Source: Octopus sinensis (lineage: Eukaryota). From it: a DNA stretch of 64,000 nucleotides. The stretch spans positions 21,142,001-21,206,000 of the forward strand of contig NC_043002.1 in the NCBI RefSeq assembly GCF_006345805.1, given 5' to 3'. The notes below the pieces were generated by a model. It was not told where the DNA came from and did no database searches. It worked only from the letters and a program-made list of their open reading frames with translations. Below, one piece after another: positions 35,690-62,614 of the stretch (its first letter is position 1; each line of letters starts with the position of its first letter). The position numbers and the translations under genes are program-made.

Positions 35690-36412
35690 AGAGGTTATTG
35701 TAGTTGTAGTTGTTGTTGATGGTGGTGGTTGAGCTGATGGTGGTTGCTGGTTGTGATGGTAGCAATGATGATGATATTGGTGATGGTGGTGGTTTTGGTA
35801 ATGGTGGTGGTGGTAGTGATGATGATGATGGTATTGGTAAAGGTGGTGATAGAGGTGGTGGATGGTGGTGATGGTGCTGGTGGATGATGGTAATGGTAAT
35901 GGTAATGGTGGTGGTGGTGGTGATGATGGTATTGGTAAAGGTGGTGATAGAGGTGGTGGATGGTGGTAGTTGTGGATGATGGTGGTGGTAAAGGTGGCAA
36001 TAGAGGTGGTGGATGGTGGTGATGCCGCTGGTGGATGATGGTAATGGTAATGGTAATGGTGGTGGTGGTGGTGGTGATGGTGGTGGTGCCGGAATAAAAT
36101 AACGTGGAAACAAGACAAAGCACTATATCTGTCTGCTTCGTTAATCATCTTTATTAAATGGCAAATCGGGTGTAATTGTTGACACCACAATTGCTGTGGC
36201 TGCAAATGTCATGGCAACAATTACTAGATTGCACCCTCCTCCTCTCACCCCACTCTTCCTCTTCCTATATCTCTATCCCTAACCTTATCATCCCTCTCTC
36301 TTTCTCTCTCTCTTTCTCTTTTTCTTTCTCCCTCCTCTCTCTCTGTTTCTAACTCTTACTCCTCCTCACATGTCATTTAGAGGAGAGTGGTAACTTTGTT
36401 AGAACCCATTTG

Positions 36413-36461
<49 letters not shown>

Positions 36462-36891
36462 TGTGTGTGTGTGTGTGAATGAGGATTTTATATATGTGTG
36501 CTTGTGTCTAACAATCTGTCTGTGTGTCTCTGTATGTTTTTTGTGTGTGTCTGTCTCTCTGACTCTGTATGCTTGTGTGTGGATGTGTGCATGTGTACGT
36601 AACTGTGTATGCATGTATGTGTGTGTGTGTGTGTGTATGTTTGTATCCTTATGTGTGTAAGTGTGTCTTGCCTTTGTGCCTCTATATTCCTGCATGCATG
36701 CCTCTGTGTGTGTGAGTGTGTGTGTGTGTGTATGTGTGTGTGTATGAGTGTGTGAGTGTGTGCACACACTAGTATGCATGTGTATCCCTCTGTCTGTCTG
36801 TCTCTCATTGTGTCTCTATATGTCTGCACATGTGCCTCAGTGCATGTGTGAGTGTATGTGTGTGTATGCGTGTGAGTGTGTGCATGTGTGT

Positions 36892-36922
<31 letters not shown>

Positions 36923-37980
36923 CACCCACACACTAGTATGTATGTGTATCCATCTGTCTGTGTATGTGTATGTGTGTGAGTGTGTGTGTGTGTGTGTTTG
37001 TGCGCATGTACACACTAGTATGTATGTGTATCCGTCTGTCTGTCTGTCTGTGCATGAGTGAGAGAGTGTGTGTGTGTATGCATGCACACGCTAGTATGTA
37101 TGTGTATCCGTCTGTCTGTCTGTCTGTCTAACTGTCTGTCTGTCTGTCTGTCTATCTATATGTCTGTCTATCAGTCTGTATGTCTGTCTGCGTTACTTTA
37201 TCCAGGAATGTCAAATTCTCATGTTGTTCCACTCACTGCTACAAATGTTGCTATTCTTCATATTGTTACTATTATTGTTGTTGCTCCTTCTGCTGCTGCT
37301 CTTTCTGCTGATGCTGTTGTTGTTGTTGTTGTTATTGTCCTAGTTGTTGCAGTGGTTGTTGATAAAACCTGTCATTTTCGTTGCTATTCTAGTTGTTGCT
37401 GCTATTGTGGTCAACATTTGTTGCTATTGTCATTATGACACTGTTGTCTTAGTTGTTGTTATTGTACTAGTAGTGGTGGTGGTGGTAGCGTTGGTTGTAA
37501 TAGTTGTGGTAGTGGTGTTGGTGTTGGTAGTGGTGGTGGTAGTGATGGTGTTGGTTGTAGTTGTAGTGGTGGTGGTGGTAGTGGTGGTGGTGGCGGTGTT
37601 GGTGGTGGCAGCAGTGGTAGTGGTGGTGGTGGTGGTGTTGGTGGTGGTGGTGGTGTTGGTGGTAGTGGTGGTGTTGGTTGTTGTTGTAGTGATGGTGGTG
37701 GTGGCAGCAGTGGTAGTGGTGGTGGTGGTGTTAGTGGTGATGGTGGTGGTGGTGTTGTTGGTGGTAGTGATGTTGTTATTGTTGGTGGTGGTGGTGTTGG
37801 TTGTAGTAGTAGTGGTGGTGGTGGTGGTGGTGATGGTAGTAATAGTAGTAGTTGTAGCTGGTATTGTTGCAGAAGATGATGTTGTAGATATTGTTGCTAT
37901 TGTAGTAATAATTCATGTTATTATCATTATTATTGTTGTAGTAGATGTTTTATTCCTATTGTTGTTGCTGTTTTTGTTGT
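35690..37980. repeat. Compound (GGT/GAT)n, (TC)n, (TG)n and (GGT/GTA)n low-complexity tract
   Basis: Direct inspection. Internal higher-order repetition is visible. Confidence 0.95.
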
Positions 37981-38606
37981 TCTCATCATCATAATCATCA
38001 TCAAGGTAGTGTGCTGGCAGAATTGCCAGCGCCTCACACAAAACGTTCCATAGTATTTCTCCTTGCTCTTTACAATCTGGCTCCAAATCCCTTCAAAGTC
38101 AACTCTGCTCTCATCTCTTCAGAGCTGGCCGAATTATTAACGCATTCGACAAAATGCTTAACAGCATCACTTCTGTCCAAATGTTCTCAGTTCAAATTCT
38201 GTCGAGGCTGACTTTGCCTTTCATTTTCTGGGGTCAGTAAAATAAATACCAGTTGAGTAATGGTACTGATGTAGTTGACTCAACCCCTCTTTCCTTCCAA
38301 AATTTCAGGCCTTGTACCTATGTTAGAAGGGACTGTGAGATTCTTCGATCATCCCTAGAAGTGTTCCTGCATACTTCTGTGGTTTGTTTTATTGTATACT
38401 ATGTATACTTTATATATATTTATACACAAATACACACACACACACCTTATAAAAACAGCCAACAACTGATGAAGGGTCATTCTTTATGTTGTTTGTTTTG
38501 TTTTCCATTTGTGTCTTTCATTGTTTGAAAGAATAGTTTATGTTCCAAGTACTTGTGCTTCATACTTTTTTGTTGTACAAGTTTCATGATGTCCGGTGCT
38601 CACATA

Positions 38607-38641
<35 letters not shown>

Positions 38642-38696
38642 AGATGTAAGTATGTTACATATAATTATGTATATATGCATATATATCTTATTTATA

Positions 38697-39490
38697 TCAT
38701 CATCATCATCATCATCATCGTTTAACGTCCGCTTTCCATGCTAGCATGGGTTGGACGGTTCAACTGGGGTCTGGGAAGCCCGAAGGCTGCACCAGGCCAG
38801 TCAGATCTGGCAGTGTTTCTACAGCTGGATGCCCTTCCTAATGCCAACCACTCCGAGAGTGTAGTGGGTGATTTTATGTGCCACCGACACAGGTGCCAGA
38901 CGAGGCTGGCGAACGGCCACGCTCGGATGGTGTTTTTTACGTGCCACCGGCACGGAGGCCAGTCAATGCGGTACTGGCTACGGCCACGTTCGGATGGTTT
39001 TTGTATGTGCCACCGGCACTGGTACCACAAAACTACAAATTCCATTAATGCATTAATGTTCATCGAGTTTGCTTTTGATTTTGTCCATTTTCACTTGCCT
39101 CAACAGGTCTTCACAAGTAGAGTTATGTGTCCCAAGAAGGAAGGTATGCATAGGTGCACTGACTACGTTCCAGGTGGGGGCCATGGGTTATGGCCTCACT
39201 TGTCCAGCCGGGTCTTCTCACGCACAGCATACTTCCAAAGGTCTCGGTCTCTGGTCATTTCCTCGGTGAGACCTAAAGAGCGAAGGTCGTTCTTCACCAC
39301 CTCGTCCCAGGTTTTCCTGGGTCTGCCTCTTCCACAGGTCCCCTCAACCACCAGGGTGTGGCACTTTTTCACACAACTATCTTCATCCATTCTTACTACG
39401 TGTCCATACCAGCATAGACGCCTCTCTTGCACACCGCATCTGATGCTTCTTAGGTCCAACTTTTCTCTCAAGGCACTTACACTCTGTCTG
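38697..39490 (-). mobile_element. 5'-truncated RTE LINE copy of a sister subfamily with a monomeric 3' UTR
   Basis: ORF 39196-39528 (QERRLCWYGHV...RGRPRKTW...EKTRLDK*), followed leftwards by a single 3' UTR and an (ATC)n tail on the + strand. Confidence 0.92.
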
Positions 39491-39510
39491 GTATATATAT
39501 ATATATATAT

Positions 39511-42500
39511 TTTCTGGGCAGGGAACACTGACGGGGTTGGTGGCGTGGGTATACTTATCGCTGAGAAATGGATAGATAGAGTAATTGAGGTAATCAGAGT
39601 AAGTGACAGAATACTTAAGATTAGAATAGTGCTTCATAATAGATTAGCAACCATTATATCGGCCTATGCCCCTCAGCCAGGGCTACCGATGGACAGAAAG
39701 ACAGTTTCTATGACACCCTACTGCAGACCACCTCATTGACGAACGACAGGGACCTTCTCTTTGTGGCTGGTGATTTCAATGGTCATGTTGGACGACATGC
39801 TGGGGGCTTCCATGGCGTGCATGGAGGCTACGGTTTGGTTCCCGCAACGAGGAGGGAACCAGGCTGCTGAGTTCTGCGATGCGAATAGTCTTATGATCTG
39901 CAACACTAACTTCAGGAAACAAATAAGCCACCTGGTCACCTACCGATCGGGCCGGCATACTAGCCAAATCGACTACACTCCTCGCCAGAAAAAGGGAAAG
40001 ATGGCTGCTTATAAATGCCAAAACCTTCCCAGGCGAAGAATGCACCCCACAACATAGACTGGTAGTTAGTGACTTTAGGATCAGGACTAAGAGGGCGACT
40101 AGAAGACGACCAACATGGAGAAGAAGTGTCTGGAAGCTTAAAGACCCTGCGAATGGACAGAGATTTAGAGATATGTTACTTGAAGCCTTTGACGAAGTGG
40201 AAGGGGGTATAGCTACACATGGGGTAGAAGACACTGGACGTTTCTGAGGGACAACCTGCTGAAGCCGCTGACCAGATCTGTGGCTGGTGCAAAGTCCCCT
40301 AAGACCCAAAATAACATGGTGGTGGAACAATATTGTTGATAGGGCTATTAGACAAAAGAAACAGGCTTGGAAGGCCTGGAAGAACGGTGGTAGCAGGGAA
40401 GTGTATCAGACTGCCAGAAGGGAAGCCAGGAGACAGTCTATCTAGCAGAGGGGAAGCAGATAAAAGAAAATTTGCCAATGTCCTGCGCCGTGAGGATGAA
40501 AGACTTGAGGTATTTCGTGTTGCAAGACAGTGTGTGAGAGAGAATCGAGATGTGGTAGGAGAGAAATGTGTTCGCATGGAGGATGGTTCACTTGCGCTAA
40601 ATGAGGATGCAAAGAGAGAAGCTTGGAGACGCCACTATGAAAGGTTGCTGAATGAGGAAAATGAATGGGATAAAGAGAGTCTGCCGAATGTTGACCCAAC
40701 AGAGGGACCAGCTATCCGAGTTGATAGTTCCGTGGTAGCTAAGGCAATTAGAAGCATGAAGACAGGGAAAGCCCCAGGCCATCAGGAATTACTGCAGAGA
40801 TGCTCAAAATATCTGGTAGTGTCGGCTATAGCATAGTCACCCGTATAGTTAACCAGGTGATACACGAAGGAGTCATACCCAATGACTGGTGTAGCAGCAT
40901 AATAGTCAACTGCTACAAAGGTAAAGGCGATGCCCTAGATACAAATAACTACAGGGGCATCAAGCTGTTGGATCAGGTAATGAAGGTTACGGAGAGGGTT
41001 ATAGCCCAGTTAATTAGAGAGAGAGTTAGCTTAGATGATATGCAGTTTGGGTTCGTGCCAGGGAAAAGTACTACTGATGCTATATTCCTGGTAAGACAGC
41101 TGCAGGAGAATACCTAGCCAAAGGTAAGCCCTTGTACCTGGCTTTTGTTGACTTAGAGAAAGCCTTTGACAGGGTCCCCCGATCCCTTATCTGGTGGTCA
41201 ATGAGGAAACTAGGGATAGATGAATGGTTAGTGAGAGCTGTGCGAGCCATGTACAGAGACGCAGCTAGTAAGGTGAGGGTTGGCAACGAGTACAGTGAGA
41301 ATTCCGGGTAGAGGTTGGGGTCCACCAAGGTTCAGTCCTCAGCCCCCTCCTATTATCATAGTCCTCCAAGCAATAACGGAAGAATTTAAGACAGGATGCC
41401 CCTGGGAGCTCCTATATGCTGATGACCTTGCTCTAATGCTGAGTCACTATCAGAACTGGAGGAGAAGTTTCAGGTGTGGAAACAAGGATTAGAATCGAAG
41501 GGCCTTAGAATCAACCTAGCCAAAACCAAAGTCCTAATAAGTAGGAAGGTGGACCAACCACAAACGACTTCAGTAGATGGCCCTGCTCGATCTGTAAAAA
41601 AGGTGTAGGTAGAAACTCTATAAGGTGCACCAAGTGTAAGCTATGGACACATAAGAGGTGCAGCAATGTCAAAGGAAGGCTAACTAAGAAAATAGTTTTT
41701 GTCTGTGGCAGATGCTCAAGAGAAATAAACACTGGAAATGTGCAGAGACCAACTTCTACCACGTTCCAGGGAGACAAACTAGAAGTAGTTGATAGCTTCT
41801 GCTACCTAGGAGACCAAGTCAGTAGCCGGGGTGGGTGTGCTGAAAGTGTAACTGCTAGAGTAAGAATAGCCTGGGCAAAGTTTAGAGAGCTCTTACCCCT
41901 GCTGATGACAAAAGGCCTCTCGCTAAGAGTAAAAGGCAGACTATATGATGCGTGTGTACGTACAGCCATGCTACATGGTAGTGAAACATGGGCCGTGACA
42001 GCTGAGGATATGCGTAAGCTTGCAAGAAATGAAGCCAGTATGCTCCGATGGATGTGTAATGTCAGTGTTGTCATAATCGTCAGAGTGTAAGTACTTTGAG
42101 AGAAGTTGAACCTAAGAAGTGTCAGTTGTGGTGTGCAAGAGAGACGGCTGCGCTGGTATGGTCATGTGACGAGAATGGCTGAAGATAGTTGTGTGCAAAA
42201 GTGCTACACCCTAGCAGTTGAGGGAACCTGTGGAAGAGGTAGACCCAGGAAAACCTGGGACGAGGTGGTGAAGCACGACCATCGAACTTTAGGTCTCACC
42301 AAGGAAATGACTGAAGACCGAGTCCTATGGAAGTGTGCTGTGCATGAGAGGACCCGGCAGGACTAGTCAGGCCATATCCCGTGGCCCCTACCTGGGACGT
42401 AGTCGATCCACCTGTGCATACCTTCCTTCTTGGACACTTGTGAAGACCTGCTGAGGCAAGTGAAAATCAATCAAAATAGATGAACATCAATGGAATTTGT

Positions 42501-44470
42501 ATCTTTGTGGTACCAGTGCCTGTGGCACACAAGAAAACCATCCGAACGTGGCCGTAGCCAGTACCGCATCGACTCGCCTCCGTGCTATGGGAACATGGTG
42601 GCACATAAAAAACCATCCGAAGACCCGGCAAGACTAGTCAGGTCATAACCCGTGGGCCCTACCTGGGACGTAGTCAGTCCACCTGTACATACCTTCCTTC
42701 TTGCGACACTTGTGAAGACTGTTGAGGCAAGTGAAAATCAAAACAAATCAAAATAGATGAACATCAATGGAATTTGTATCTTTGTGGTGTGCCGGTTGTG
42801 GCACACAAGAATCCATCCGAACGTGGCCGTAGTCAGTACCGCTTGTGGTACCAGTGCCGGTGGCACACAAGAATCCATCCGACGTGGCCGTAGTCAGTAC
42901 CGCATCACTGGCCATCGTGCTGTGGGCACATAACAAACACCATCTGGTCGTGGCCGTTCGCCAGCCTCATCTAGCACCTGTGTCGGTGGCACATAAAAAG
43001 TAGTCAGTACCGCTTGTGGTACCAGTGCCGGTGGCACACAAGAATCCATCCGAACATGGCCGTAGTCAGTACCGCATCAGGCCATCGTGCTGTGGGCACA
43101 TAACCAAACACCATCCGGTCGTGGCCGTTCGCCAGCCTCATCTAGCACCTGTGTCGGTGGCACATAAAAACACCATCCGAAGACCCGGCAAGACTAGTCA
43201 GGCCATAACCCATGGCCCCTACCTGGGACGTAGTCAGTCCACCTGTGCCATACCTTCCTTCTTGTGACACTTGTGAAGACCTGTTGAGGCAAGTGAAAAT
43301 CAAAATCAAAACAAATCAAAATAGATGAACATCAATGGAATCTGTATCTTTGTGGTACCAGTGCCGTGGCACACACTTTGTGGTACCAGTGCCGGTGGCA
43401 CACAAGAGAACCATCCGACGTGGCCGTAGCCAGTTCCGCATCGACCGGCCTCCGTGCTGTGGGCACGTAACAAACACCATCCGATCATGGCCGTTCGCCA
43501 GCCTCATCTGGCACTGTGTCGGTGGCACATAAAAACACCTTCCGAAGACCCGGCAAGACTAGTCAGTCCACCTGTGCATACCTTCCTTCTTGTGACACTT
43601 GTGAAGACCGGTTGAGGCAAGTGAAAATCAAAATCAAATCAAATCAAAATAGACAAAATAGATGAACATCAATGGAATTTGTATCTTGTGGTACCAGTGC
43701 CTGTGGTACCAGTGCCTGTGGCACACAAGAAATCCATCAGTGCTGTAGTCAGTGCGGTGGGCACATGACAAACACCATCCGATCGTGGCCGTTCGCCAGC
43801 CTCAACTAGCACCTGTGTCGGTGGCACATAAAAACACCATCCGAAGACCCGGCAACACTAGTCAGGCCATAACCCATGGCCCCTACCTGGGACGTAGTCA
43901 GTCCACCTGTGCATACCTTCCTTCTTGTGACACTTGTGAAGACCTGTTGAGGCAAGTGAAAATCAAATCAAAACAAATCAAAATAGATGAACATCAATGG
44001 AATTTGTATCTTGTGGTGCCAGTGCCGTGGCACGTGGCACACAAGGGGGCCGTCCGAACGTGGCCGTAGCCGGTGCCGCATCGACTGGCCTGTGCTGTGG
44101 GCACGTAGCAAGCACCATCCGATCGTGGCCGTTTGCCAGCCTCATCTGGCACCGTGTCGGTGGCACATAAAAACACCATCCGAGCGGGGCCGTCTGCCAG
44201 CCTCGTCTGCCACCTGTGTCGGTGGCACATAAAAACACCATCCGAGCGTGGCCGTTTGCCAGCCTCGTCTGGCACCTGTGTCGGTGGCACATAAAATCAC
44301 CCACTACACTCTCGGGTGGTTGGCGTTAGGAAGGGCATCCAGCTGTAGAAACACTGCCAGATCTGGCTGGACTGGTGCAGCTTTCGGGCTCCCCAGACCC
44401 CAGTTGAACCGTCCAACCCATGCTAGCATGGAAAGCGGACGTTAAATGATGATGATGATGATGATGATGA
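39511..44470 (+). mobile_element. RTE-clade LINE, 5'-truncated: APE endonuclease, RT with inserted PHD finger, C-terminus (stop 42364-42366), tandemly amplified 3' UTR, (GAT)n tail
   Basis: APE motifs GVGILI, IISAYAP, GDFNGHVG, SQIDY. RT motifs [45 protein letters not shown]-terminal RLRWYGHV, RGRPRKTW. Several frameshifts. Confidence 0.95.
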
Positions 44471-44480
44471 TACACATATA

Positions 44481-44757
44481 AACAATTGCAGCGTGGAAAG
44501 TGTTTGTAAGCCATTTAAGAAACACACAAAAGCCGTTCGATTCACTTCAACATTTAAGTTTAATTTGTCAAAATATTTTCGTCACTTCAAGACTGCGACC
44601 TGTTCACTGACAAAAATCTTTGCTGCATCAGTGAACAGGTCGCGGTCTTAAAGCGACGAAAATATTTTGAAAATTTAAACTTAAATGTTGAAGTGAATCA
44701 AATGGCTTTTGCGTGTTTCTTAAATGGCTTACAAACACCTTCCACGTTGCAATTGTT
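44481..44757. repeat. Fold-back inverted repeat (~130-bp arms, 17-nt spacer)
   Basis: 44481-44610 is the reverse complement of 44628-44757 at about 90% identity. A non-folded homologue lies at ~23945-24150. Confidence 0.9.
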
Positions 44758-44922
44758 TTCATTTCAGCACACAATCTCAGATCAAATCACTTGCTATGCA
44801 AGTATATCTCCGTAATATATACGTATATATATGTATATATGTGTGTGTGTGTGTACTGTGTGTGTATCATTGACATTTTTCCTTCCTCCGTCTTCCCTTC
44901 TTTGGACCATTCCTTTTTGTAT

Positions 44923-44957
44923 GTTTCTGATGAAAAGCTCTGCTTGAAACGTTAAAT
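44923..44957 (+). ncRNA. Minimal type-I hammerhead ribozyme motif in a Penelope-like terminal repeat
   Basis: GUUU-CUGAUGA-A-AAGC(UCU)GCUU-GAA-AC|GU-U-AAAU. Intact core, 4-bp helix II, helix I GUUU/AAAU, palindromic ACGU helix III. Confidence 0.55.
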
Positions 44958-45072
44958 CCTTTTTTCTTTCCTTTCCTGAGCGTCCAATAACACTATACTT
45001 GTTCCACATCCTCGCATTGTGTTTTCTCTTTGTGTTTTCATGTTTGGATTAACTATATATATGCATACATAC

Positions 45073-45120
<48 letters not shown>

Positions 45121-45361
45121 GCATACATATTTTTTTTTCATTTCATTATATGTAAAACCTCACACTTTAAGTCTGTCTTTGTATTATTCCCCTCATCCTT
45201 CACCCTGGTGACAAATAAAAAAAATCACCATCATCGTCATCGTCATCATCATCATCATGTTGCTGTTGTTGTTGCCATTGTTATTGTAGTTGTTGTCATT
45301 GTGCAAAAAGTTTCTTCAGTATGTGGTTGCTGTTCTATTCCATATATGTTTTTCTTTTCAG

Positions 45362-45439
45362 ATCAAAAGGCGGTGTGTGTTAGAATGTATCATATCCAGC
45401 GAAAAGTCGTATATCGAAAGTCTCCAGAGAATACACAAC
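45362..45439 (+). CDS. ARHGEF10: ARHGEF10-like exon, DH start (IKRRCVLECIISSEKSYIESLQRIHN)
   Basis: ttttcAG| and |GTaagt, 78 nt, phase 0-0. DH conserved region 1 (SEKSYIESL). Confidence 0.92.
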
Positions 45440-45527: not shown

Positions 45528-47420
45528 CAAGGTCGTAACAAAAGGTTTCTGGACTAGTTATGGTTAATAAAATATAACTTATTTACCTAATAAGATTTTA
45601 TAGGTTGCTTGAAGCATTGTATATGGAATATAATGTTGAAAGATTTTAAAGGCCAAACAATGCAAATAGATTTTAAGATGAGGTAACCTAAACTAAAAGT
45701 ATGTTACATGGTAATCTTTGGTCTTTTATATACATCCAGTATTTTGGGACATACAAGTCCCTTATTCAGGGTTAAAAAGAAACTGTCCTTTGTAAGATGT
45801 CTTTTGTTGGTGCCCGTGCTAGTAGGGTGCCAAGAGCACCATCCAAGCATGATCGTTGCCAGAGCAGCCAACTGGCTTCCGTGCCAGTGGCATGTAAAAG
45901 GGCACCATTCAAGCGTGATCTCTACCAACGTCGCCTTACTGGCACTTGTGCTGGTGGCATGTGTAAAAAGATTTGAGCGAGGTCGTTGCCAGTACCGCCT
46001 GACTGGCACGGTGGCACATAAAAAGCACCCACTACACTCTCGGAGTGGTTGGCGTTAGGAAGGGCATCAAGCTGTAGAAACTCTGCCAAATCAAGATTGG
46101 AGCCTAGTGCAGCCATCTGGTTCGTCAGCCCTCAGTCAAAATTGTCCAACCCATGCTAGCATGGAAAGCGGACGTTAAATGATGATGATGATAAAATAAT
46201 TCTATGATTATATTTGAATTTTCAAGTGTTTCTCTTCTTCATGAATGTTAGTGACGTCAGTTATTAACTTATTGCCCCACAAATCAATTTTCATCACCTC
46301 TTTTCTAATATGTAGCAAATGTACCTGTGTGTGTATGTCGATATGTATTGCATGCCTAGCTCCAATCTCTTATTTATTTGTGGGTTTAATTTATAGATAA
46401 TCAAAGCTTCCTTAATTCTTAAGTTGCCAAGATTTCTATCATTGGCTTCAATAGTAACTTTAATTTGTTTGTTGGTATTTTAAATATTGGATACATATAA
46501 GACCAAAGATTACCAGGTGACTCACTTTTAGTTTACATTACTGCATCTTAAAATCTATTTGCATTGTTTGGCCTTTTAAATCTTTCAACATTATTTACCT
46601 AAGTTTTAATATCATCTTCGAAATAGTCACCTTGTGCTGCAATACACCTGTCCCAACATCCCTGCATCCCCAAAGTCCATCCCCTCCTCATCATGGTGGG
46701 GACGTTGGCAGCAGGTGGTGTCAGAGCTATGCCGTCGGGAACTTTGGTTCCTGGTAGGACCACTCAAGGTGGATTGGTCTGATACCGAGTGGTATTAGGG
46801 CCACAACCCGGCAGATGGGTGAAAATCCTCAAGGTGTCTGTTTCGGCAACCGGCAGCTCCTTGGTCATTCTGTCCCTGCGTCTGCGGACAATCTGCGGCA
46901 AACAGGATGTCTCTACATGCAGGATTGTTGGGGGCCACTTGTGAAATTAATATTCCCACGAAACTTCTTCCACCGCCATGGTTCAAGATGCCTCGAGGGT
47001 GGTAGAAGAAGCCGATTCAACCCGCCCAAGGCGAATGTCACCACAAGTACAAGTAAGTACATCCCTGCCACTTTTGGAATACGGTTTGAAAGTCATTTTC
47101 TGTAAGCAAATTGAGGAGCTTATGTGATTTGCTCTGGATCTCAACAACTTCTGTCCCTTAGGGAAGAGATGGAAGTCTGCAGGTACTAAAGCTGGCAAAT
47201 AGGGCAGATGCCAAAATGATACCATGTTGTTTTTGGTGAGAAGCTCATGAGTGAAGACAGCTCAGTTAAGAATTCAATTCTTTGTACTCCACAGATCTGG
47301 TCACTTATGCCGAATGTCCTTCCTCAAGCGCTTCAAATTGTCAGAGTAACACATTTGATTGACAGTCTGGTCCTTGCAAGAAGAATTCTTGATGCACAAT
47401 GCCACATTTCTGGGAGTGAG
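45528..47420 (-). mobile_element. Mariner (DDxD) relic fragmented by nested insertions
   Basis: Minus strand: QGQTVNQ...LKRLRKDIRHK*PDLW, HLPYLPALVPADFHLFP (47070-47400) and CIAAQGDYFEDD* (~46600-46650). TA|CAAGGTCGTAACAAAAGG terminus at 45528. Confidence 0.75.
45631..46593. mobile_element. MITE-like element with ~110-bp terminal inverted repeats and a nested RTE 3' tail
   Basis: taatgttgaaagattttaaaggccaaacaatgcaaatagattttaagatg...gtaatctttggtctt (45631-45735) is the reverse complement of 46495-46593. Confidence 0.7.
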
Positions 47421-47508: not shown

Positions 47509-47682
47509 GATTACGAGACTCCAATTCTGGAAGCTGTTGACTCACAGAAATCTAAAGTGAAAAGTTCTCTGAAAAAGTTACGGGAGATACTCAACTACCA
47601 TCGCATGTTCCAGATCGAACTGGCCAATCGTGTCAATGAATGGCAGGAAGAAAATATCATTGGAGACATCTTTATCGCATCG
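47509..47682 (+). CDS. ARHGEF10: ARHGEF10-like exon, DH (DYETPILE...LREILNYHRMFQIELANRVNEWQEENIIGDIFIAS)
   Basis: tttcAG| and |GTgtgt, 174 nt, phase 0-0. Typical DH motifs EILxxHxxF and IGDIF. Confidence 0.93.
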
Positions 47683-47854
47683 GTGTGTGTTTGATTCATG
47701 TCTACTACTATCATGAAATATATTGCCTCATTTTTTAAAAAGTATTCTTTTATTGGTATAGTTCTTTGTATTTGTGTTATGCATGTCCAACTATCTACCT
47801 CTATAATATATATATATATATACATACATACATACATATACATATAATATACAT

Positions 47855-49929: not shown

Positions 49930-50046
49930 TTCTCAAAGTCAATGGTACTTGATGCTTACAGTGTATACGTGAATAATTTTACTGCCACCATGGAAGATAT
50001 CAAGAAGCTACAAAGAACTCGACAGTCATTCAGGGATTTCCTAAAA
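49930..50046 (+). CDS. ARHGEF10: ARHGEF10-like exon, DH ([39 protein letters not shown])
   Basis: ttgcAG| and |GTaagc, 117 nt, phase 0-0. Family-diagnostic [11 protein letters not shown]. Confidence 0.95.
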
Positions 50047-51165: not shown

Positions 51166-51258
51166 CAAAAGGAAGCAAATAGCCCAGACCGTCTGTCAAT
51201 ATTTGCCCTAATGGTGAAGCCAATTCAGAGATTCCCACAGTTTATCATGTGTCTTCAG
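51166..51258 (+). CDS. ARHGEF10: ARHGEF10-like exon, DH (QKEANSPDRLSIFALMVKPIQRFPQFIMCLQ)
   Basis: tatAG| and cag|GTaagg, 93 nt, phase 0-0. DH conserved region 3 (KPIQRFPQF). Not in the ORF track. Confidence 0.95.
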
Positions 51259-53093: not shown

Positions 53094-54809
53094 GTAAGTT
53101 TGTTGTTGTTATTGTTGTTATTGATGGCTGTTGAGCTGTTGCTGTTGCTATTGAGCAAACGGTCTTCATCCCAGAGCTCGTAAGATGGGAGAAGTCCGAA
53201 GTGTGGTCCTTTGCTATTTGTAAGACCCGCAAAAGAGAAAACAGGTCAACTCCCGACACCAAGAGCATTGATGGATGGATGAATGCGCATCCAGGCTCAG
53301 TGGTTGCATAGGAATTCAGGGACAAGAAACAGGAAGAAAGAGTGAGAGAAAGTTGGAGCAAAAGAGTACAACAGAGTTCGCCACCACCCCCTGCCAGAGC
53401 CTCGTGGAGCTTTTAGATGTTTTTGCTCAATAAACACACACAACGCCCAGTCTGGGAATCGAAACCGCGATCCTCCGACCACGAGTCCGCTGCCCTAACC
53501 ATTGGGCCATTGTGCCTTCACGTTGTTGATGGTGGTGATGGTGGTGGTGATGCTGGAATTGGTGGTGGTTGTGTTGGCAGTGTATGGATCCAACAAAAGT
53601 TGTGTTAAGATAGGTATTCCAGTTGGATATCCTTCCAGTCAGATACCCTTCCAGTCACTGACCCTCACCTGTTTCCAGGCAAAGTAATATTTCATTTAGT
53701 CCTTTAAACATCAAACAAACAGTTCAATGGCAGGATATATTTTCATGGAAAACTGTAAATAAATGGCAGAGGCAGCAGCAGCAGAGGCGGCGGCGGTGGT
53801 GGTGGTGGTGGTGGTGGTGGTGGCGTAGGGTGAATCAAGTGGTGCTAGTGTGGGTGATGATGGTAGTTATTGCTTCCTAGAAGAGTACCTCATCCGATCC
53901 AGCCAAACACCATTTTATTGTACCCGCTTCCAACATCTCAAAGATTATGGAGACACAATAGTGTCCTGCTGTAGAGAAAGCACATGGTTACTTGACCAGA
54001 GAGAGAAAAAGAAAGGGAAAGGGAGGCACACACACACACACACACTCATACATACACACACTCATACATACACACACTCACACATACATACACACACACA
54101 ACATTGCCCCAATGTGTCCTTTTTCAAATGGTTGAATGGGATTTGAGGGAGATTCGACTTCTATTTCCATCAGTTGTTATAATGACCAAGAGAGTCCCTC
54201 TTTTGAGTTGTGTGTCTGAGTGTATGTGTGTGTGTGTGTAAGCACATACAGACACACATACATCTATATTCATGTATGTGTGAATACATATATCTCATCA
54301 TCATCATCATCATCATCATTATCATTGTCATCATTTAACGTCCATCTTCCATACTAGCATGGGTGATGTATATATAATATATATACACATACACACACCA
54401 AACAGTTGTACTTATGTGCCATTTGTGACAGATAATGGACTGTGGCTCCTTCAACCCGTAGCTCACCTCTCTATTTATCTAGCTAGCTATGACTCCTCAC
54501 TGTTAATTAATCATTCAAATATTTACTCCTAACTTACCTTTAATTTATGCTAAATTATTCATTCCTTTTCTTCACCTCATTGTTTCCTATTTACCCTCTC
54601 ACTTTACCTTTAATATATTCACAAATTCTCACTACCTTTTATATCGCCTATTATATAGTGACATAATTCCCAGTCCATTAACTTTAGCTCTAATTTATGC
54701 TGATCTATTCACTCTTCATTTACTTCTTCTTGCAGTTATGTACCTCCCACTCTCAAACATTTAATTTATGTTAATTAATTCAGGTATTCTTTCTCCTTTG
54801 TTTTTATAG

Positions 54810-54883
54810 GTGAATAATTGTACAAAGAAGCGGCGATTAATAATGCTAAATGATGCACTTGTGTGTATCAAGGTGCAGGAGAG
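54810..54883 (+). CDS. ARHGEF10: ARHGEF10-like exon, PH-like (VNNCTKKRRLIMLNDALVCIKVQE)
   Basis: ttatAG| and |GTatgt, 74 nt, phase 0-2. RRxxMLNDxLxC PH motif. Confidence 0.9.
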
Positions 54884-55571
54884 GTATGTGTATTTTTGTT
54901 GATGTTAATGTTTAGTCCTGGGTCAATCTTGATCCAGTACATCTGTGATCAAAGGTATCATCATCATCATCATCATCATTTAGCGTCCGTTCTCCATGCT
55001 AGCATGGGTTGGACGGTTCAACTGGGGTCTGTGAAGCTGGAAGGCTTCATCAGGCCCAGTCAGATCTGGCAGTGTTTCTACGGCTGGATGCCCTTCCTAA
55101 TGCCAACTACTCCGTGAGTGTAGTGGGTGCTTTTTACGTGCCAGGTATAATAAATAATAATAAATGCACCCTTTTAAAGCCTAGCCAGGCTCATGGGCCC
55201 GGTTTCCTGGTTTCAGTGGCATATGTGTTCCCCAGCTGGATGGGACACCAGTCCATCACAGCGTTACACATTTTTGCCAGCTGAGTGAACTGGAGCAACG
55301 TGAAATGAAGCATTTTGCTCAAGAACACAACGCATCGCCTGGTCCAGGAATCGAAACCACAATCTTACTATCATGATGCTGACACCCTAACCACTAAGCT
55401 ACGTGCCTCCACAATCAAAGGTATAAACAGCCATAATCATAATGTCTATAGGACAACATTGCCTAATGTGTCCTTTTTCAAATGGTTGAATGGGATTTGA
55501 GGGAGATTTGACTTCTATTTCAATTAGTTGTTATAATGACCAAGAGAGTCCCTCTTTGGAGTTATGTGTCT

Positions 55572-55994: not shown

Positions 55995-57058
55995 ACACAC
56001 ACGTAAATGTCAAACAATAAGAATGAATGCTCAACGCCCTCTACATTGGTGGATAAAATTTCTCTATTTGTGTATAATGGTTGCCGTTGGTTTTATGTAA
56101 AGAAAAATATGTTAATACCTTAACAATTTTTCAAGCTGATCCATAGTCTTGAAGAGTTTTAGTCAAACAAATCAACTCTAGGACTTATTTTTTAAGCCTA
56201 GTACTTATTCTACTGGTCTCTTTTGCCAAACTGCTAAGTTACGGGGACATAAACACACCAACATCGGTTGGCAAATGGTGGTAGGGAGAAAAGCACAGAC
56301 ACAAAGACACACACACAGATGCATACATCATTATCATCATCATGATGTAAATGTATGTCTGTGTGTCATTGTGTCTGTTTTTGTCTCCCCCTTACCACTT
56401 GTCAATTAATGGTGGTGTCTTTTAGTTTCCATCTACCAAATCCACTCACAAGACTTTGGTTGGCCCAAGGCTATAGTAGAAAACACTTGTCCAGAGTACC
56501 ATACAATGGGACTGAACCTGGAACCATGTTGTTGGGAAGCAAGCTTCTTACCACACAGCCCCATCTGAGCTATATAGATATATATAGTTTAAATTTACAG
56601 TAAAACAAAAGATGAAGACAGATGCATGAACAACAACCAGGTGTATTAATTGGATGCTCAGGAAAGTGAGAAAGTTTTTATGCTTCGAGCCTGTGCTCTT
56701 CAACAGAAAAGAATAAGAAAAAATAAACAGAGAGAGAATAAAAAAAAACTTGTGGATTTAGCAATATATCATCATCATCGTTTAACGTCCGTTTTCCTTG
56801 CTAGCATGGGTTGGACGGTTTGACCGGGGTCTGGGAAGCCAGGGGTTGCACCAGGCTCCAGTCTGATTTGGCAGTGTTTCTACAGCTGGATGCCCTTCCT
56901 AATGCCAACCACTCTGTGTGTAGTGCGTGCTTTTTACATGCCACCGGCACAGGTGCCAAGGGAGGCTGGCAGCGGCCATGATCGGTTGGTGCTTTTTATG
57001 TGCCACCAGCACAGAACCCAGTCAAGGCGGTGCTGGCATTGGCCATGTTCGGATGGTG

Positions 57059-57114
<56 letters not shown>

Positions 57115-57184
57115 GCACACATATATTGTTATTAATTTATCATAATCATTTCTTAATAATAATAATGGATGTATTTGATTACAG

Positions 57185-57333
57185 TGACAGAGATGGCGAG
57201 CTCATTGAACGGTACAAACACAAGTGGACTGTCCCTTTACAGGATGTACGGCTAAAGTCCAGCTGTACCATACCACCTAAGATGAAATCTCCATATACAC
57301 CAACAGGAGAACCATATGGCTTCCAAAGAATTG
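57185..57333 (+). CDS. ARHGEF10: ARHGEF10-like exon, PH-like (DRDGELIERYKHKWTVPLQDV...GFQRI)
   Basis: ttacAG| and |GTaagg, 149 nt, phase 2-1. RYxxKWxVPL PH motif. Confidence 0.9.
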
Positions 57334-57399: not shown

Positions 57400-57995
57400 G
57401 AATAGCTTAGCCTCTGGAGCAACACTTGAGGGTAGCCTGTTGAGTGATACATAAGAGTAGCTTAGCCTGTTGAGTGATACTTAAATATAGTTCAGATGTT
57501 ACAGTTGAATGTTACTAGTTTTGTTGAGTGATGCATGAGAGTAACTTGTTGAGAGTAGCTTGAAGGTAACTGAGTTTGTTGAGAAAAACATATATGGAAT
57601 AAAACAGCAACCACATACTGAAGAAACTTTTTGCACAATGACAACAACTACAATAACAATGGCAACAACAGCAACATGATGATGATTTTTTTTATTTGTC
57701 ACCAGGGTGAAGGATGAGGGAAATAATACAAAGACAGACTTAAAGTGTGAGGTTTTACATATAATGAAATGAAAAAAAAAAATGTATGCATGTATATATA
57801 TATATATTGTTGAATGAAACCTAACAAAAGTGATACTTGAAGGTAGTTTAGCTTGTTGAGAGATACTTAATGGTAGCTTAGCTTACTAAGTTATACTTGA
57901 GGATAGATTATCCTGTTGCATATTAACTGAAGGTAGCTTAGCTTATTGAGTGATACATGAGTCTAGCTTATTGAACGAACTTCAAGGCAGATTAG
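57400..57995 (+). repeat. Degenerate ~30-bp minisatellite (tagcttagcctgttgagtgatacttgaagg), split by the 57583-57806 insertion
   Basis: Repeated gttgagtgatac and tagcttagc motifs on both sides of the insertion. Confidence 0.75.
57583..57806 (-). repeat. Inverted copy of the 3' end of the intron preceding exon 45362
   Basis: Reverse complement of ~45103-45354, near-identical apart from microsatellite length changes. Flanked by TTGTTGA direct repeats (57576-57582 and 57807-57813). Confidence 0.93.
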
Positions 57996-58242: not shown

Positions 58243-58358
58243 ACTCTAAAAGTAAAAATGTAGAAGACATTTATGAAGAGATCCATGCAATGAATCATGA
58301 TTATATCATATGGAGCCAAATGCACAACCTTGCTTCATCCCTCAAACTAGCATATGAT
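58243..58358 (+). CDS. ARHGEF10: ARHGEF10-like exon (SKSKNVEDIYEEIHAMNHDYIIWSQMHNLASSLKLAYD)
   Basis: atttcAG| and |GTaagt, 116 nt, phase 1-0. Bridges the phases of its neighbours and resembles LYQDLQNLLHDLNVIGQI. Confidence 0.85.
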
Positions 58359-60457: not shown

Positions 60458-60576
60458 GCCCTTAACGAAGAGTTAATCAATGGAATATTGAGTGACCTTC
60501 AGCGCAGTATTCAAGTCCAAACTGAACAAGTCCAGCTTGTGAACAACTGTATCATAGAACTGGAGATTCCTGACAA
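60458..60576 (+). CDS. ARHGEF10: ARHGEF10-like exon (ALNEELINGILSDLQRSIQVQTEQVQLVNNCIIELEIPD)
   Basis: caccAG| and |GTaggt, 119 nt, phase 0-2. Confidence 0.85.
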
Positions 60577-62614
60577 GTAGGTCTAAGGTCTTTTATATTT
60601 ATTAATTTTTTTCTCTTTAATTCTTTGTCACATTTGGTGATAATGATGCTACTGTCAAGGATGAAGGACTCTTGTTCCTATTCAAATTTTAAACAGTCTA
60701 CTAGGCACAGGCGTGGGTTCATGGCCGACCAAAGCCTTGTGAGTGGATCTGGTAGATGGAAACTGAAAGAAGCCCATCATATATATATATATGTAAGTAT
60801 GTGTGGGTTTATGTGTTTGTCCCCCTAACATCGCTTGACAACCGATGCTGGTGTGTTTATGTTCCTGTAACTTAGCGGTTCGGCAAAAGAGACCGATAGA
60901 ATAAGTACTAGGCTTACAAAGAATAATTCCCGGGGTCAAGTTGCTCAACTAAAGGCAGTGCTCCAGCATGGCCACAGTCAAATGACTGAAACAATTAAAA
61001 GAGTAAAAGAGTCTGTTGATGAAGTCTCTAAAATCCTATATGAAAAAATGGCTTGACCCCTAAATCCAAAAACAGTACATGAGACCTTGTTTATTATTGA
61101 TTCATTGATCATATGAGATCCTAAACCAAGGTGCCATGTAAAAAACATTGGTATAGGTGTTGGTGCCACTTAAAAAGTACTGGCAATGGTGCCATGTAAA
61201 AAGTATCCTGTACACTCTGTGGAATGGTTGTTGACAGGACGGCCATCAAGCCAAAAGAGACTATGAAACCTGATGTGGCCACTGGCCTTGCCAACTCATG
61301 CCAGCATGGAAAACAGACATTAAATGTTGATGATGATGATGATGATGATCATCATCATCACTTATCCAGGATAATATGGTAATGCTCAACTGTGAACCAT
61401 GTTACGCTTATCATGGATTGATTTGTAATAACACAGGTTGGCAGTCAGTCAAAGATTTTATCTGTATTGCAAAAACACATCCCAGCAACCATCCATAATG
61501 GTCAGCTACCCAGAATGCACAAACTATTTCTTGTGCTTATATGACCCTGCTATAAGGCTGTGTATTTTCTATAAGGATTTAGGTACTTGTACTCATCAAC
61601 ATGTGGAGGCATGTGGCTTAGTGGTTAGGGTATCAGAACCATGATCGTAAGATTGTGGTTTTGATTCCTGGACCAGGCGACGCATTGTGTTCTTGAGCAA
61701 AACACTTCATTTCACGTTGCTCCAGTCCACTCAGCTAGAAAAAATGAGTAACGCTGTGATGGACTGGCGTTCGGTCCAGCTGGGGAACACATACGCCATA
61801 GAAACTGGGAAACCGGGCCCATGAGCCTAGCTAGGCTTTAAAAGGGCGCATTTATTTTATTTTTTACTCATCAATATGGGACCAGTGAACAGAAAAAAAT
61901 ATGAAAGTGCATGATCCAAATAAATGGTGCAGGTGAGTGTATTCTCTACAGGAAAGGGTAGAGATGATCAAGAAAATACAAAATGAAAGAAGCTTTGATG
62001 CTGTGGGCTGCAAATTTGGTGTCAATGAATTTGCTATTTGTTCCATTTACAAAGTGCATAGAGATTTATCACTGTGCTTTTTGGAACCAAACCCCCTTGA
62101 TAAGCAAAGATAGATGTAATATAATATATTGTAAGGAAGCATTGGTAAACTAAAGTTTTGTTATGAATATATAGGTGCAGGTGTGGCTGTGTACAGGTGC
62201 AGGCATGGCTGTGTGGAAAGAAGCTTGCTTCCCAACCACATTTTTGTTTTTATTATTAACTAGCTTAAAAGTCGCACTTTGTGTGGACTTTTAAGCTAGC
62301 TCCTGCAGAGGGCTAATTGGACTTGTGGCCCAAAACTAAAGAGAGCAATAATAATAAGGCATTTATTGGTACCCTACCAATATGGTATTTCTTTAAATTC
62401 AGTTGAAATGAAAAACTTGTATGCTCACAAATTTTTGGAGTTCTTTTAAAATTTGAATTTTCAAATTATAACAAATTCTCATCTAGATCTGATCCCAATG
62501 CTGGATGTTTAAGAACCAAATGAAGGGCAGATTTTCAACCTCAGGATCATTCCGATTTCAAAAAGATATAATATATCTATGTAGAGCAAATGTAGCCTGA
62601 GATACAGGGGTCCT

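What the first reader, a model, noticed from the sequence alone, without database searches (positions are those of the whole stretch)
57576..57813. TSD-flanked inverted copy of an intron 3' end: candidate retroposed intron RNA inside its own gene
Seen: 57583-57806 is the reverse complement of ~45103-45354, which is unique non-TE sequence. It stops about 7 nt short of the AG acceptor of exon 45362, so it spans the branch-point and pyrimidine-tract region. It differs only by a few substitutions and shorter (CAT)/(GTT) runs. It sits in a minisatellite between 7-bp direct repeats (TTGTTGA). Established: LINE target-primed reverse transcription can copy cellular RNAs from their 3' end and leaves short TSDs. 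Inference: an excised or trimmed intron, or a nascent RNA, was reverse-transcribed from near its 3' end, possibly by the abundant RTE machinery, and inserted antisense 12 kb downstream in the same gene. DNA-repair template switching is the alternative.
Basis: partly seen in the sequence, partly recalled or inferred. Interest (0 to 1): 0.82.

Follow-up and report, generated by a model that had tools for sequence, protein, structure and literature searches.

The report
Inverted copy of intron end
A 224-base piece from the end of one intron of an octopus ARHGEF10-like gene was copied, upside down, into another intron of the same gene 12 kb downstream; it is real and recent, but its "target-site duplication" is probably just two neighbouring units of a tandem repeat, so it looks like an ordinary repair or replication patch, not a retroposed intron.

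Summary
Window 57583-57806 is the reverse complement of about 45104-45355, which ends 6-7 nt before exon 45362-45439 of an ARHGEF10-like RhoGEF gene. The informative cores occur exactly twice in the window.

I fetched the orthologous Octopus bimaculoides locus.
- The source sits there in the same place, directly upstream of the same exon.
- The insert is absent there, so the direction (source to insert) and a lineage-specific origin are established.
- At both clean point differences the insert keeps the O. bimaculoides base. It is therefore an independently evolving copy, not an assembly chimera.

The retroposition reading is weakened.
- The O. bimaculoides empty site does not carry one TTGTTGA. 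It carries two, 30 bp apart, as the conserved motif of adjacent minisatellite units. The insert sits where the 23 bp between them lie.
- Other window-specific insertions at this locus do show a single-copy target in O. bimaculoides.
- The insert lacks the (GAT)n tail carried by all 12 SINE-type 3' ends inspected (one resident LINE copy runs into the same tail), and it has no poly(A).
- Junction microhomology is 1-3 nt.

Best reading: a one-step templated insertion with a small target deletion, probably DNA-templated. An RNA patch is not excluded. Interest is modest.

The parts
45104..45355 (+). Source (donor): the last ~250 nt of the ~15-kb intron (30240-45361) that precedes the first DH-domain exon. 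It contains (TA)n, a T-run, a unique core, (CAT)n/(GTT)n, a second unique core, and the start of the polypyrimidine tract.
   Evidence: The ortholog in O. bimaculoides is L002 7787-8005 (88% identity), directly upstream of the same exon (L002 8020-8097).
45362..45439 (+). Exon E2 (IKRRCVLECIISSEKSYIESLQRIHN), the start of the RhoGEF/DH domain. The AG acceptor is at 45360-45361 and a gtaagt donor follows at 45440.
57184..57333 (+). Exon E8 (PH-domain part, ...DRDGELIERYKHKWTVPLQDV...GFQRI). A gtaagg donor follows at 57334. The insert starts 249 nt downstream of this donor.
57400..57990 (.). Minisatellite with a 30-bp period (unit approximately GTAGCTTAGCYTGTTGAGTGATACWTGAAG) that hosts the insert. 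It is conserved in O. bimaculoides, with several unit-scale differences between the species.
57576..57582 (+). Left TTGTTGA. It corresponds to the motif of the O. bimaculoides unit at L002 20785.
57583..57806 (-). The insert: a 224-nt reverse-complement copy of the source. It is absent from the orthologous O. bimaculoides intron.
57807..57813 (+). Right TTGTTGA. It corresponds to the motif of the next O. bimaculoides unit at L002 20815. The following ATGAAACCTAACA... is also native (O. bimaculoides reads ATGAAACTTAACA...).
58243..58358 (+). Exon E9 (DSKSKNVEDIYEEIHAMNHDYIIWSQMHNLASSLKLAYD). It shows that the insert is intronic, inside a 909-nt intron.

Best explanation
This is a lineage-specific, one-step templated insertion.

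Proposed mechanism (inferred): a break or stalled fork arose inside a 30-bp-period minisatellite in the E8-E9 intron. A free 3' end paired through 1-3 nt of microhomology with DNA 12.2 kb upstream in the same gene, on the opposite strand. About 225-250 nt were copied between a (TA)n tract and the T-rich polypyrimidine tract. The end then rejoined the minisatellite with loss of about 23 bp. This is replicative template switching or synthesis-dependent end joining of the FoSTeS/MMBIR or 'class 2 templated-sequence insertion' type.

On this reading the flanking TTGTTGA pair is not a target-site duplication. It is the conserved motif of the two neighbouring minisatellite units that survived on either side.

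Shown: the copy, its direction, its absence in O. bimaculoides, the pre-existing pair of TTGTTGA, and the missing retroelement tail.
Inferred: that the template was DNA, and that insertion and the 23-bp loss were a single event.

Predicted, untested consequence: the pre-mRNA now carries a ~224-bp near-perfect inverted repeat. One arm covers the branch-point and polypyrimidine region of exon E2; the other lies 249 nt after exon E8.
For: - Source is ancestral, insert is derived. O. bimaculoides has the source ortholog directly upstream of E2 and no copy between E8 and E9.
- Copied after the species split. Insert and source share 7 differences from O. bimaculoides. At the 2 clean source/insert differences the insert keeps the O. 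bimaculoides base.
- The empty site. O. bimaculoides reads ...CTGAGCTTGTTGA-GTGACACTTGAGGGTGGATTATC-TTGTTGAATGAAACTTAACA.... TTGTTGA recurs at L002 20785, 20815, 20845, 20875 and 20905, an exact 30-bp period. Both flanks of the insert are therefore native neighbouring units, and 23 bp are missing.
- Controls. Other window-specific insertions at this locus have a single-copy target in O. bimaculoides: 46666-47060 (ATCCCTGC) and 60700-61005.
- Junctions. There are no untemplated bases. Microhomology is 2-3 nt (AG/GAG) on the left and 1 nt on the right.
- No retroelement tail. All 12 SINE-type 3' ends inspected in the window end in GGACGTTAAAYGA(TGA)n, and a resident LINE copy runs into the same repeat-rich 3' region. 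The insert has no such tail and no poly(A) at either end.
- Cis, inverted, 12 kb away. This is expected for template switching. A freely diffusing RNA landing within 12 kb of its source in a ~2.7-Gb genome has a chance of about 1e-5 per event (my estimate).
- Both donor ends lie in sequences where polymerases stall: (TA)n and T5CT4.
Against: - The donor's end lies only 6-7 nt from a 3' splice site. For a DNA template this is a coincidence of roughly 0.3-0.5% (my post-hoc estimate from ~12 exons in 64 kb). An intron-derived RNA would explain it naturally.
- Under a one-step model the two breakpoints fall exactly at the edges of the two TTGTTGA motifs, about 0.2-0.5% for random breakpoints. The alternative (prior loss of one 30-bp unit, then insertion with a true 7-bp TSD) needs two events. 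It is plausible because this minisatellite shows three other unit-scale differences between the species.
- 224 bp copied from 12 kb away is larger and more distant than canonical MMBIR templated insertions, which are 10 to ~100 bp from within 100 bp (PMC8421209).
- Only one, fairly distant outgroup was available.
Confidence: 0.5

Rival explanations
1. RNA patch without TPRT. An intron-derived RNA of this gene (nascent pre-mRNA, or an excised and 3'-trimmed lariat still near the transcribing locus) was reverse-transcribed, by a LINE RT or a repair polymerase with RT activity. The cDNA was used to patch a break in the minisatellite, with a 23-bp microdeletion and no TSD. This is the 'class 2 templated sequence insertion' type.
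For: - The donor end is 6-7 nt upstream of the 3' splice site, inside the polypyrimidine tract.
- The donor is transcribed in sense as part of the gene.
- The junction features (no TSD relative to O. bimaculoides, microdeletion, 1-3 nt microhomology) are those described for class 2 TSIPs, which can use intronic templates (PMC5110952).
- RT-bearing LINEs are present in the window and are reported active in octopus (PMC9115989).
- Locality could come from co-transcriptional tethering (inference).
Against: - There is no RNA-specific mark: no splice junction, no poly(A), and no A-to-G changes in the sense orientation. The 2 clean differences are changes in the source, not in the insert.
- If the source then resembled O. 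bimaculoides (GTTTTTCTCTCCTGTTATCCAG), the copy ended 12-14 nt from the exon rather than 6-7, so the link to an RNA end is loose.
- The source RNA is not unusually structured (z = +1.0) and matches no Rfam family above threshold, so nothing suggests a stable intron-derived RNA.
- Landing 12 kb from the source needs a special locality argument.
Confidence: 0.22
2. An RNA from the intron 3' end was retroposed by LINE (RTE-type) target-primed reverse transcription at a staggered nick. The result is 5'-truncated in the (TA)n run and carries a genuine 7-bp TSD (TTGTTGA). The target allele had already lost one 30-bp minisatellite unit, or lost it afterwards.
For: - Perfect 7-bp direct repeats abut the insert with no filler.
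- Unit-scale indels bounded by repeat motifs are common in this minisatellite: 14-bp and 44-bp differences from O. bimaculoides lie nearby. A pre-insertion allele with a single TTGTTGA is therefore credible.
- LINE RT and endonuclease remnants and many SINEs are in the window.
- Real insertions here make 5-10-bp TSDs.
Against: - The only empty site available shows both TTGTTGA already present, 30 bp apart, so this model needs an extra event.
- Neither end of the insert carries the (GAT)n tail seen on all 12 SINE-type 3' ends inspected, or poly(A). LINEs whose SINEs share their 3' end are generally thought to recognise that tail (established knowledge; Ohshima and Okada, cited in PMC9115989).
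- The nick site TTGTTGA/AT matches no tested endonuclease preference.
- A trans retroposition landing 12 kb from its source is about 1e-5 per event (my estimate).
Confidence: 0.12
3. Member of a dispersed repeat family (SINE/MITE), or an assembly artefact. On this reading the two copies are independent TE insertions, or the insert is a mis-joined read.
For: - The genome is repeat-rich and the segment contains microsatellites.
- Genome-wide copy number could not be checked. Exact-match scans of metagenome and viral collections found nothing, but those collections are not expected to hold octopus DNA.
Against: - The cores occur only twice in 64 kb, and once (the ortholog) in 53 kb of O. bimaculoides.
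- The source is at the orthologous position in a species 13-33 My apart.
- The insert shares 7 lineage-specific states with the neighbouring source, which independent TE copies would not.
- There are no TIRs, no tRNA-like head, and no family tail.
- A chimeric assembly would be identical to the source. Instead the insert differs and keeps ancestral bases where the source has changed.
Confidence: 0.05

Closest known systems
Class 2 templated sequence insertions / TSIPs (Onozawa et al.; review PMC5110952)
   Same: A few hundred bp copied from elsewhere in the genome, including intronic sequence, is patched into a break. There is no TSD, there is a microdeletion and microhomology at the junctions, and the source is retained.
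   Different: The human cases are templated from distant loci and are argued to go through RNA. Here the template is 12 kb away in the same gene and inverted, and the nature of the template is unknown.
FoSTeS/MMBIR templated insertions (MMB-TI; PMC8421209)
   Same: An inverted copy of a nearby template, junction microhomology, return to the original template, and occurrence at repetitive, structure-prone DNA.
   Different: Canonical MMB-TIs are 10 to ~100 bp copied from within 100 bp. This one is 224 bp from 12.2 kb away, and microhomology is only 1-3 nt.
LINE-mediated retroposition of cellular RNAs (class 1 TSIPs, processed retrocopies, snoRNA retroposons)
   Same: A non-TE transcribed sequence is copied to a new site. 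Short direct repeats abut the insert.
   Different: There is no poly(A) or LINE-type tail. The direct repeats pre-exist as neighbouring minisatellite units in the outgroup. The source holds no recognisable RNA gene (Rfam).
Intronic complementary sequences flanking circularised exons (e.g. inverted Alu or MIR pairs; PMC7371899)
   Same: The event creates a long inverted repeat in the introns that flank a block of exons (E2-E8). This is the geometry known to favour back-splicing and ADAR editing.
   Different: This is only a predicted consequence. One arm overlaps the branch-point and polypyrimidine region of E2, which could instead hinder its use. No RNA data were examined.

Membership tests
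LINE/RTE target-primed retroposition (retrocopy, class 1 TSIP) | Target-site duplication: the flanking repeat is single-copy at the empty site | tested here: not met
   O. bimaculoides has two TTGTTGA, 23 bp apart, as adjacent minisatellite units. Control insertions at the same locus do show single-copy targets. Caveat: the outgroup is distant and the array is variable.
LINE/RTE target-primed retroposition (retrocopy, class 1 TSIP) | 3' tail of the partner LINE, or poly(A), next to the 3' TSD | tested here: not met
   All 12 SINE-type 3' ends inspected in the window end in ...GGACGTTAAAYGA(TGA)n, and a resident LINE copy runs into the same 3' region. The insert ends in GTTTTTC on one strand and (TA)7 on the other.
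LINE/RTE target-primed retroposition (retrocopy, class 1 TSIP) | Donor boundaries coincide with the ends of an RNA species | tested here: inconclusive
   The 3' boundary is 6-7 nt short of the exon, or 12-14 nt if the donor then resembled O. bimaculoides. The 5' boundary is inside (TA)n. Neither is a defined processing site.
LINE/RTE target-primed retroposition (retrocopy, class 1 TSIP) | Insertion at the endonuclease's preferred nick site | not testable with these tools
   The preference of the octopus RTE endonuclease is unknown. The site would be TTGTTGA/AT.
Templated insertion by repair or replicative template switching (class 2 TSI, FoSTeS/MMBIR) | The insert is a copy of another genomic site that is retained, and it is absent at the orthologous site | tested here: met
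Templated insertion by repair or replicative template switching (class 2 TSI, FoSTeS/MMBIR) | No TSD, a small target deletion, and junction microhomology without long homology | tested here: met
   Relative to O. bimaculoides, 23 bp are replaced. Microhomology is 2-3 nt and 1 nt, with no filler. This depends on the outgroup reflecting the pre-insertion allele.
Templated insertion by repair or replicative template switching (class 2 TSI, FoSTeS/MMBIR) | Canonical MMB-TI scale (10 to ~100 bp, template within 100 bp) | tested here: not met
   The insert is 224 bp and the template is 12.2 kb away, against the definition in PMC8421209.
Dispersed TE family (SINE/MITE) | Many dispersed copies, with a tRNA-like head, TIRs or a family tail | tested here: not met
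   There are two copies in 64 kb and one orthologous copy in 53 kb of O. bimaculoides. No tRNA was found, and there are no TIRs or tail. Genome-wide copy number was not testable.
Retrocopy of an intron-hosted RNA gene (snoRNA, mirtron) | The source holds a recognisable structured RNA gene | tested here: not met
   Rfam gives only sub-threshold hits on the (TA)n hairpin (best 50.9 bits against a gathering score of 90). The fold z-score is +1.0.

The most novel reading that the evidence does not exclude
An RNA from the 3' end of the upstream intron (nascent, or an excised and 3'-trimmed lariat held near the transcribing gene) was reverse-transcribed and used in cis to patch a break 12 kb downstream in the same gene. 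This would be a natural germline example of local RNA-templated break repair in an animal with active LINE reverse transcriptases. It would also have created an inverted-repeat pair that flanks exons E2-E8 and can form a ~224-bp dsRNA.
Probability: 0.2. Interest if true: 0.7.

Novelty: new member of a known kind. Interest (0 to 1): 0.3.

Why it matters
As it stands this is one clean, dated example of a small intragenic templated insertion in a cephalopod genome. Donor, recipient and an outgroup empty site are all resolved to the base. It also shows how a minisatellite motif can mimic a target-site duplication.

It would matter more in two cases.
- If a closer empty allele, or a genome-wide survey, showed that donor ends of such copies cluster at 3' splice sites. 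That would indicate intron RNA as a repair or retroposition template.
- If the new inverted repeat has a measurable effect. One arm covers the branch-point and polypyrimidine region of the first DH exon; the other lies 249 nt past exon E8. Possible effects are on splicing, on circularisation of exons E2-E8, or on A-to-I editing of ARHGEF10 transcripts, in animals known for heavy RNA editing.

Tried and rejected
- Protein search with the ORF spanning exon E8 and its flank, hoping to pull cephalopod WGS contigs: no hits. The database does not hold such spurious ORFs.
- Exact-pattern scans of metagenome contigs (twice) and viral contigs for the two unique cores: no hits. This is uninformative, because those collections are not expected to contain octopus DNA.
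- O. vulgaris ortholog (CAI9724835.1). This would be the ideal close outgroup, since the window's exons differ from it at only 2 clear amino-acid substitutions in the 384-column alignment, apart from one short block where the gene models splice differently. Its gene spans 158 kb, so no DNA was returned. XP_014776104.1 is not on record.
- My first guess from memory that the gene was ECT2-like was wrong. The search shows ARHGEF10-like.
- Rfam, tRNA and folding tests for a structured RNA gene in the source: negative.
- Helitron or TIR-transposon reading: the ends (GAAAAAC... / ...TATATATA) show no TIRs and no 5'-TC/CTRR-3' termini.
- A-to-I editing footprint in the insert: none, though only 2-4 differences exist.
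- I ran no further search on classifying the LINE as RTE. That label is untested here; only a weak RVT_1 hit was obtained.

Full report
**1. The observation**

The sequence is as described. The repeat finder reports two inverted arms: 45103-45234 with 57676-57807 (132 nt, 98%), and 45251-45355 with 57582-57686 (105 nt, 95%). A gapped alignment joins them into one block. The block is interrupted only by a shorter (CAT)n/(GTT)n stretch in the downstream copy. BLAST within the window gives E = 7e-95.

The insert is 57583-57806 (224 nt). TTGTTGA abuts it on both sides, at 57576-57582 and 57807-57813. The source runs from inside a (TA)n tract (about 45104) to 45354/45355. The acceptor AG is 45360-45361 and the exon begins at 45362. 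The copy therefore stops 6-7 nt before the exon.

With microsatellites excluded, the two informative cores (45140-45222 and 45296-45356) each occur exactly twice in the 64-kb window.

**2. Gene context**

Splicing the + strand exons found by six-frame reading gives a complete RhoGEF/DH domain (Pfam PF00621, positions 5-180 of 180, E = 1.6e-35) followed by PH_19.

The best database relative is O. bimaculoides 'rho guanine nucleotide exchange factor 10-like', at 92% identity. O. vulgaris CAI9724835.1 is 96% identical over the 384-column alignment. Apart from one short block at the E7/E8 junction where the gene models splice differently, it differs at 2 clear substitutions. The window therefore comes from a very close relative of O. 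vulgaris.

Using those proteins as a guide, the exons are 30093-30239, 45362-45439 (E2), about 47509-47683, 49930-50046, 51166-51258, 52887 to about 53090, 54810-54884, 57184-57333 (E8), 58243-58358 (E9), 60459-60577 and about 63.69 kb.

The source is thus the last ~250 nt of a ~15-kb intron. The insert lies antisense, 249 nt into the 909-nt intron between E8 and E9, inside a minisatellite of 30-bp period.

**3. The orthologous locus**

Cluster members of the best hit included XP_014776104.2, whose gene is on record. That yielded 53 kb of O. bimaculoides chromosome CM046606.1 (L002). The window and L002 are collinear from about 31 kb to 64 kb.

Three results follow.

(a) The source is ancestral. 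Window 45123-45355 aligns to L002 7787-8005 at 88% identity, directly upstream of the identical exon E2 (L002 8020-8097).

(b) The insert is derived. Its only full-length match in L002 is that same source ortholog. The E8-E9 intron of O. bimaculoides has nothing at the corresponding place.

(c) The copy was made after the species split and has evolved independently since. I counted 174 aligned columns outside microsatellites.
- Source and insert differ at 2 sites.
- Source and O. bimaculoides differ at 9 sites.
- Insert and O. bimaculoides differ at 7 sites.
- At both source/insert differences the insert keeps the O. bimaculoides base.

This excludes an assembly chimera, which would be identical to the source. 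It also argues against two independent insertions of a repeat family.

Dating rests on only two substitutions and is very uncertain. Scaling by the O. vulgaris-O. bimaculoides split of 13.3-33.5 My, or by 0.0036 substitutions per site per My (both quoted in PMC13282606), puts the event roughly 1.5-7 My ago.

**4. The 'TSD'**

The O. bimaculoides empty site reads ...AACTGAGCTTGTTGA GTGACACTTGAGGGTGGATTATC TTGTTGAATGAAACTTAACAGTAGTGATAC....

TTGTTGA is the conserved core of the minisatellite unit. It recurs at L002 20785, 20815, 20845, 20875 and 20905, exactly every 30 bp.

The window's left flank (...AACTGAGTTTGTTGA) is orthologous to the unit at 20785. Its right flank (TTGTTGAATGAAACCTAACA...) is orthologous to the unit at 20815. 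The 224-nt insert sits where O. bimaculoides has the 23-bp remainder of the first unit. Both heptamers were already there.

As a control I examined other window-specific insertions at this locus. For 46666-47060 the flanking ATCCCTGC (8-10 bp) is single-copy in O. bimaculoides. For 60700-61005 a 5-7-bp repeat is single-copy. Genuine TSDs therefore look different from this case.

Two histories remain.
- (A) One event that inserted 224 bp and removed about 23 bp.
- (B) Two events: loss of one 30-bp unit by slippage, either before or after, plus an insertion with a true 7-bp TSD that happens to be the unit motif.

History (B) is not far-fetched, because the array shows three other unit-scale differences between the species. 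My rough likelihoods favour (A) by about 2-5 to 1. I treat the TSD as unproven and more likely an artefact of the repeat's periodicity.

**5. Tests of a retroelement-mediated origin**

All 12 SINE-type 3' ends I inspected in the window end in ...GGACGTTAAAYGA(TGA)n. A resident LINE copy (39.4-42.4 kb) runs into the same repeat-rich 3' region. LINEs whose SINEs share their tail generally recognise that tail (established knowledge; Ohshima and Okada, cited in PMC9115989).

The insert ends in ...GTTTTTC in the sense orientation and in (TA)7 in the other. It has no (GAT)n tail and no poly(A).

The source contains no recognisable RNA gene. Rfam gives only sub-threshold hits on the (TA)n hairpin. 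No tRNA was found. The source RNA folds no better than shuffled sequence (z = +1.0).

There is no A-to-G footprint of editing, although too few differences exist for this to be informative.

I did not verify that the LINE belongs to the RTE clade. Only a weak RVT_1 hit was obtained.

**6. Junctions**

There are no untemplated bases.
- Left junction: the native sequence (...TTGTTGAG|TGAC) and the reverse-complemented donor (...AAAAG|AAAAAC, or ...GGAGAG|AAAAAC if the donor then resembled O. bimaculoides) share 2-3 nt.
- Right junction: 1 nt is shared.

Both donor ends lie in awkward DNA: a palindromic (TA)n tract about 32 nt long and a T5CT4 tract.

These features match TSD-less templated insertions.
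- They fit the 'class 2' templated sequence insertions of Onozawa and colleagues, which show microdeletion and microhomology and sometimes use intronic templates (PMC5110952).
- They fit replicative template switching. Canonical MMBIR templated insertions, however, are much shorter and come from within 100 bp (PMC8421209).

**7. DNA or RNA template?**

The sequence alone cannot decide. Two coincidences pull in opposite directions.

For RNA: the donor end lies 6-7 nt from a 3' splice site. With about 12 exons in 64 kb, a random segment end would do this about 0.3-0.5% of the time (my post-hoc estimate). The argument is softened because O. bimaculoides has 14 nt, not 6, between the boundary and the exon (GTTTTTCT|CTCCTGTTATCCAG against GTTTTTCT|TTTCAG). 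The distance at the time of copying is therefore unknown.

For DNA: donor and recipient are 12.2 kb apart, in cis and inverted. This is the natural outcome of template switching near a stalled fork or a resected break. A diffusible RNA would land that close about once in 1e5 events in a ~2.7-Gb genome, unless it is used locally.

One more oddity: the 8-nt indel between the species begins exactly at the donor boundary. If it is a deletion that arose together with the copy, it would be a scar at the donor and would argue for a DNA-level event. I could not polarise it.

My weights are:
- DNA-templated one-step insertion, about 0.5.
- Local RNA patch, about 0.2.
- TPRT with a true TSD, about 0.12.
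- Repeat family or artefact, about 0.05.
- The rest unassigned.

**8. Consequence (predicted, untested)**

The pre-mRNA now carries two complementary arms able to form a ~224-bp duplex. Cofold gives -350 kcal/mol, with one bulge. One arm covers the branch-point and polypyrimidine region of E2. The other lies 249 nt after E8.

Inverted intronic repeats that flank exons favour back-splicing (for example PMC7371899). Long dsRNA is an ADAR substrate. Pairing could also mask the E2 acceptor. RNA data are needed to test any of this.

**9. Verdict**

The direction and lineage-specific origin are established. The unique, non-TE nature of the source is supported only within the roughly 117 kb I could search.

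The 'TSD-flanked retroposed intron' interpretation is not supported by the one empty site available or by the tail test. It is not formally excluded.

This is a new example of a known kind of event, a templated insertion, and is of modest interest. A single comparison with O. vulgaris or O. sinensis would resolve the main question.

Noticed in passing
window 45355-45361 vs L002 8006-8019: The last nucleotides of the intron before exon E2 differ between the species by an 8-nt indel plus 2 substitutions (window GTTTTTCT|TTTCAG, O. bimaculoides GTTTTTCT|CTCCTGTTATCCAG). The indel begins exactly at the boundary of the copied segment. It may be a coincidence in a T-rich tract, or a donor-side scar of the copying event. 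Its polarity is unknown.
   Followed up: partly
window: 12 SINE-type 3' ends, e.g. 20530-20565, 27715-27745, 29030-29062, 46170-46195, 61310-61350 (+); 2130-2165, 18500-18530, 21900-21950, 38690-38725, 54300-54345, 54955-54985, 56765-56790 (-): An abundant SINE-like family ends in ...CCATGCTAGCATGGAAAGCGGACGTTAAAYGA(TGA)n. Several copies are followed directly by (TA)n microsatellites. The LINE copy at about 39.4-42.4 kb runs into the same repeat-rich 3' region, which consists of tandem units carrying a GGCACA(C/T)AA(G/A)AAACCATCCGAA-type motif (42.4-44.3 kb). This suggests a LINE/SINE pair with a shared tail.
   Followed up: partly
window 46666-47060 and 60700-61005: These are window-specific insertions relative to O. 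bimaculoides, with clean single-copy targets in the outgroup (TSD ATCCCTGC, 8-10 bp; and about AGTCT, 5-7 bp). I used them as controls for what real TSDs look like here. Their element families were not identified.
   Followed up: partly
window 61423-63578 vs L002 ~24323-24330: About 2.1 kb of (GGATGGAT)-type minisatellite is present in the window where O. bimaculoides has only a few units. This is a large lineage-specific expansion inside an intron of the same gene.
   Followed up: no
window 32150-33007 (-) and 23151-23513 (-): Remnants of Tc1/mariner-type transposases (Pfam DDE_3, E = 5e-7; HTH_Tnp_Tc3_2, E = 6e-8) lie inside the gene's introns.
   Followed up: no
window 54810-54884 / 57184-57333 vs O. 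vulgaris CAI9724835.1 residues ~598-606: The O. vulgaris model reads ...NDALVLTEM-AELIERY..., where the window and O. bimaculoides give ...NDALVCIKVQES(D/E)RDGELIERY.... The O. vulgaris annotation probably uses different splice sites at the E7/E8 junction.
   Followed up: no
window 45086-45117 and 57062-57113: Long (TA)n tracts lie at the donor's 5' boundary and 470 bp upstream of the insertion site. (TA)n is its own reverse complement, so the two tracts are mutually complementary (repeat finder pairs I20/I23). This could help bring the two loci together, or stall forks, at both places.
   Followed up: no
window 57400-57990 vs L002 20620-20990: The 30-bp-period intronic minisatellite is conserved between species 13-33 My apart. 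Apart from the insert site, it differs by at least two motif-bounded unit-scale indels (14 bp and 44 bp).
   Followed up: partly
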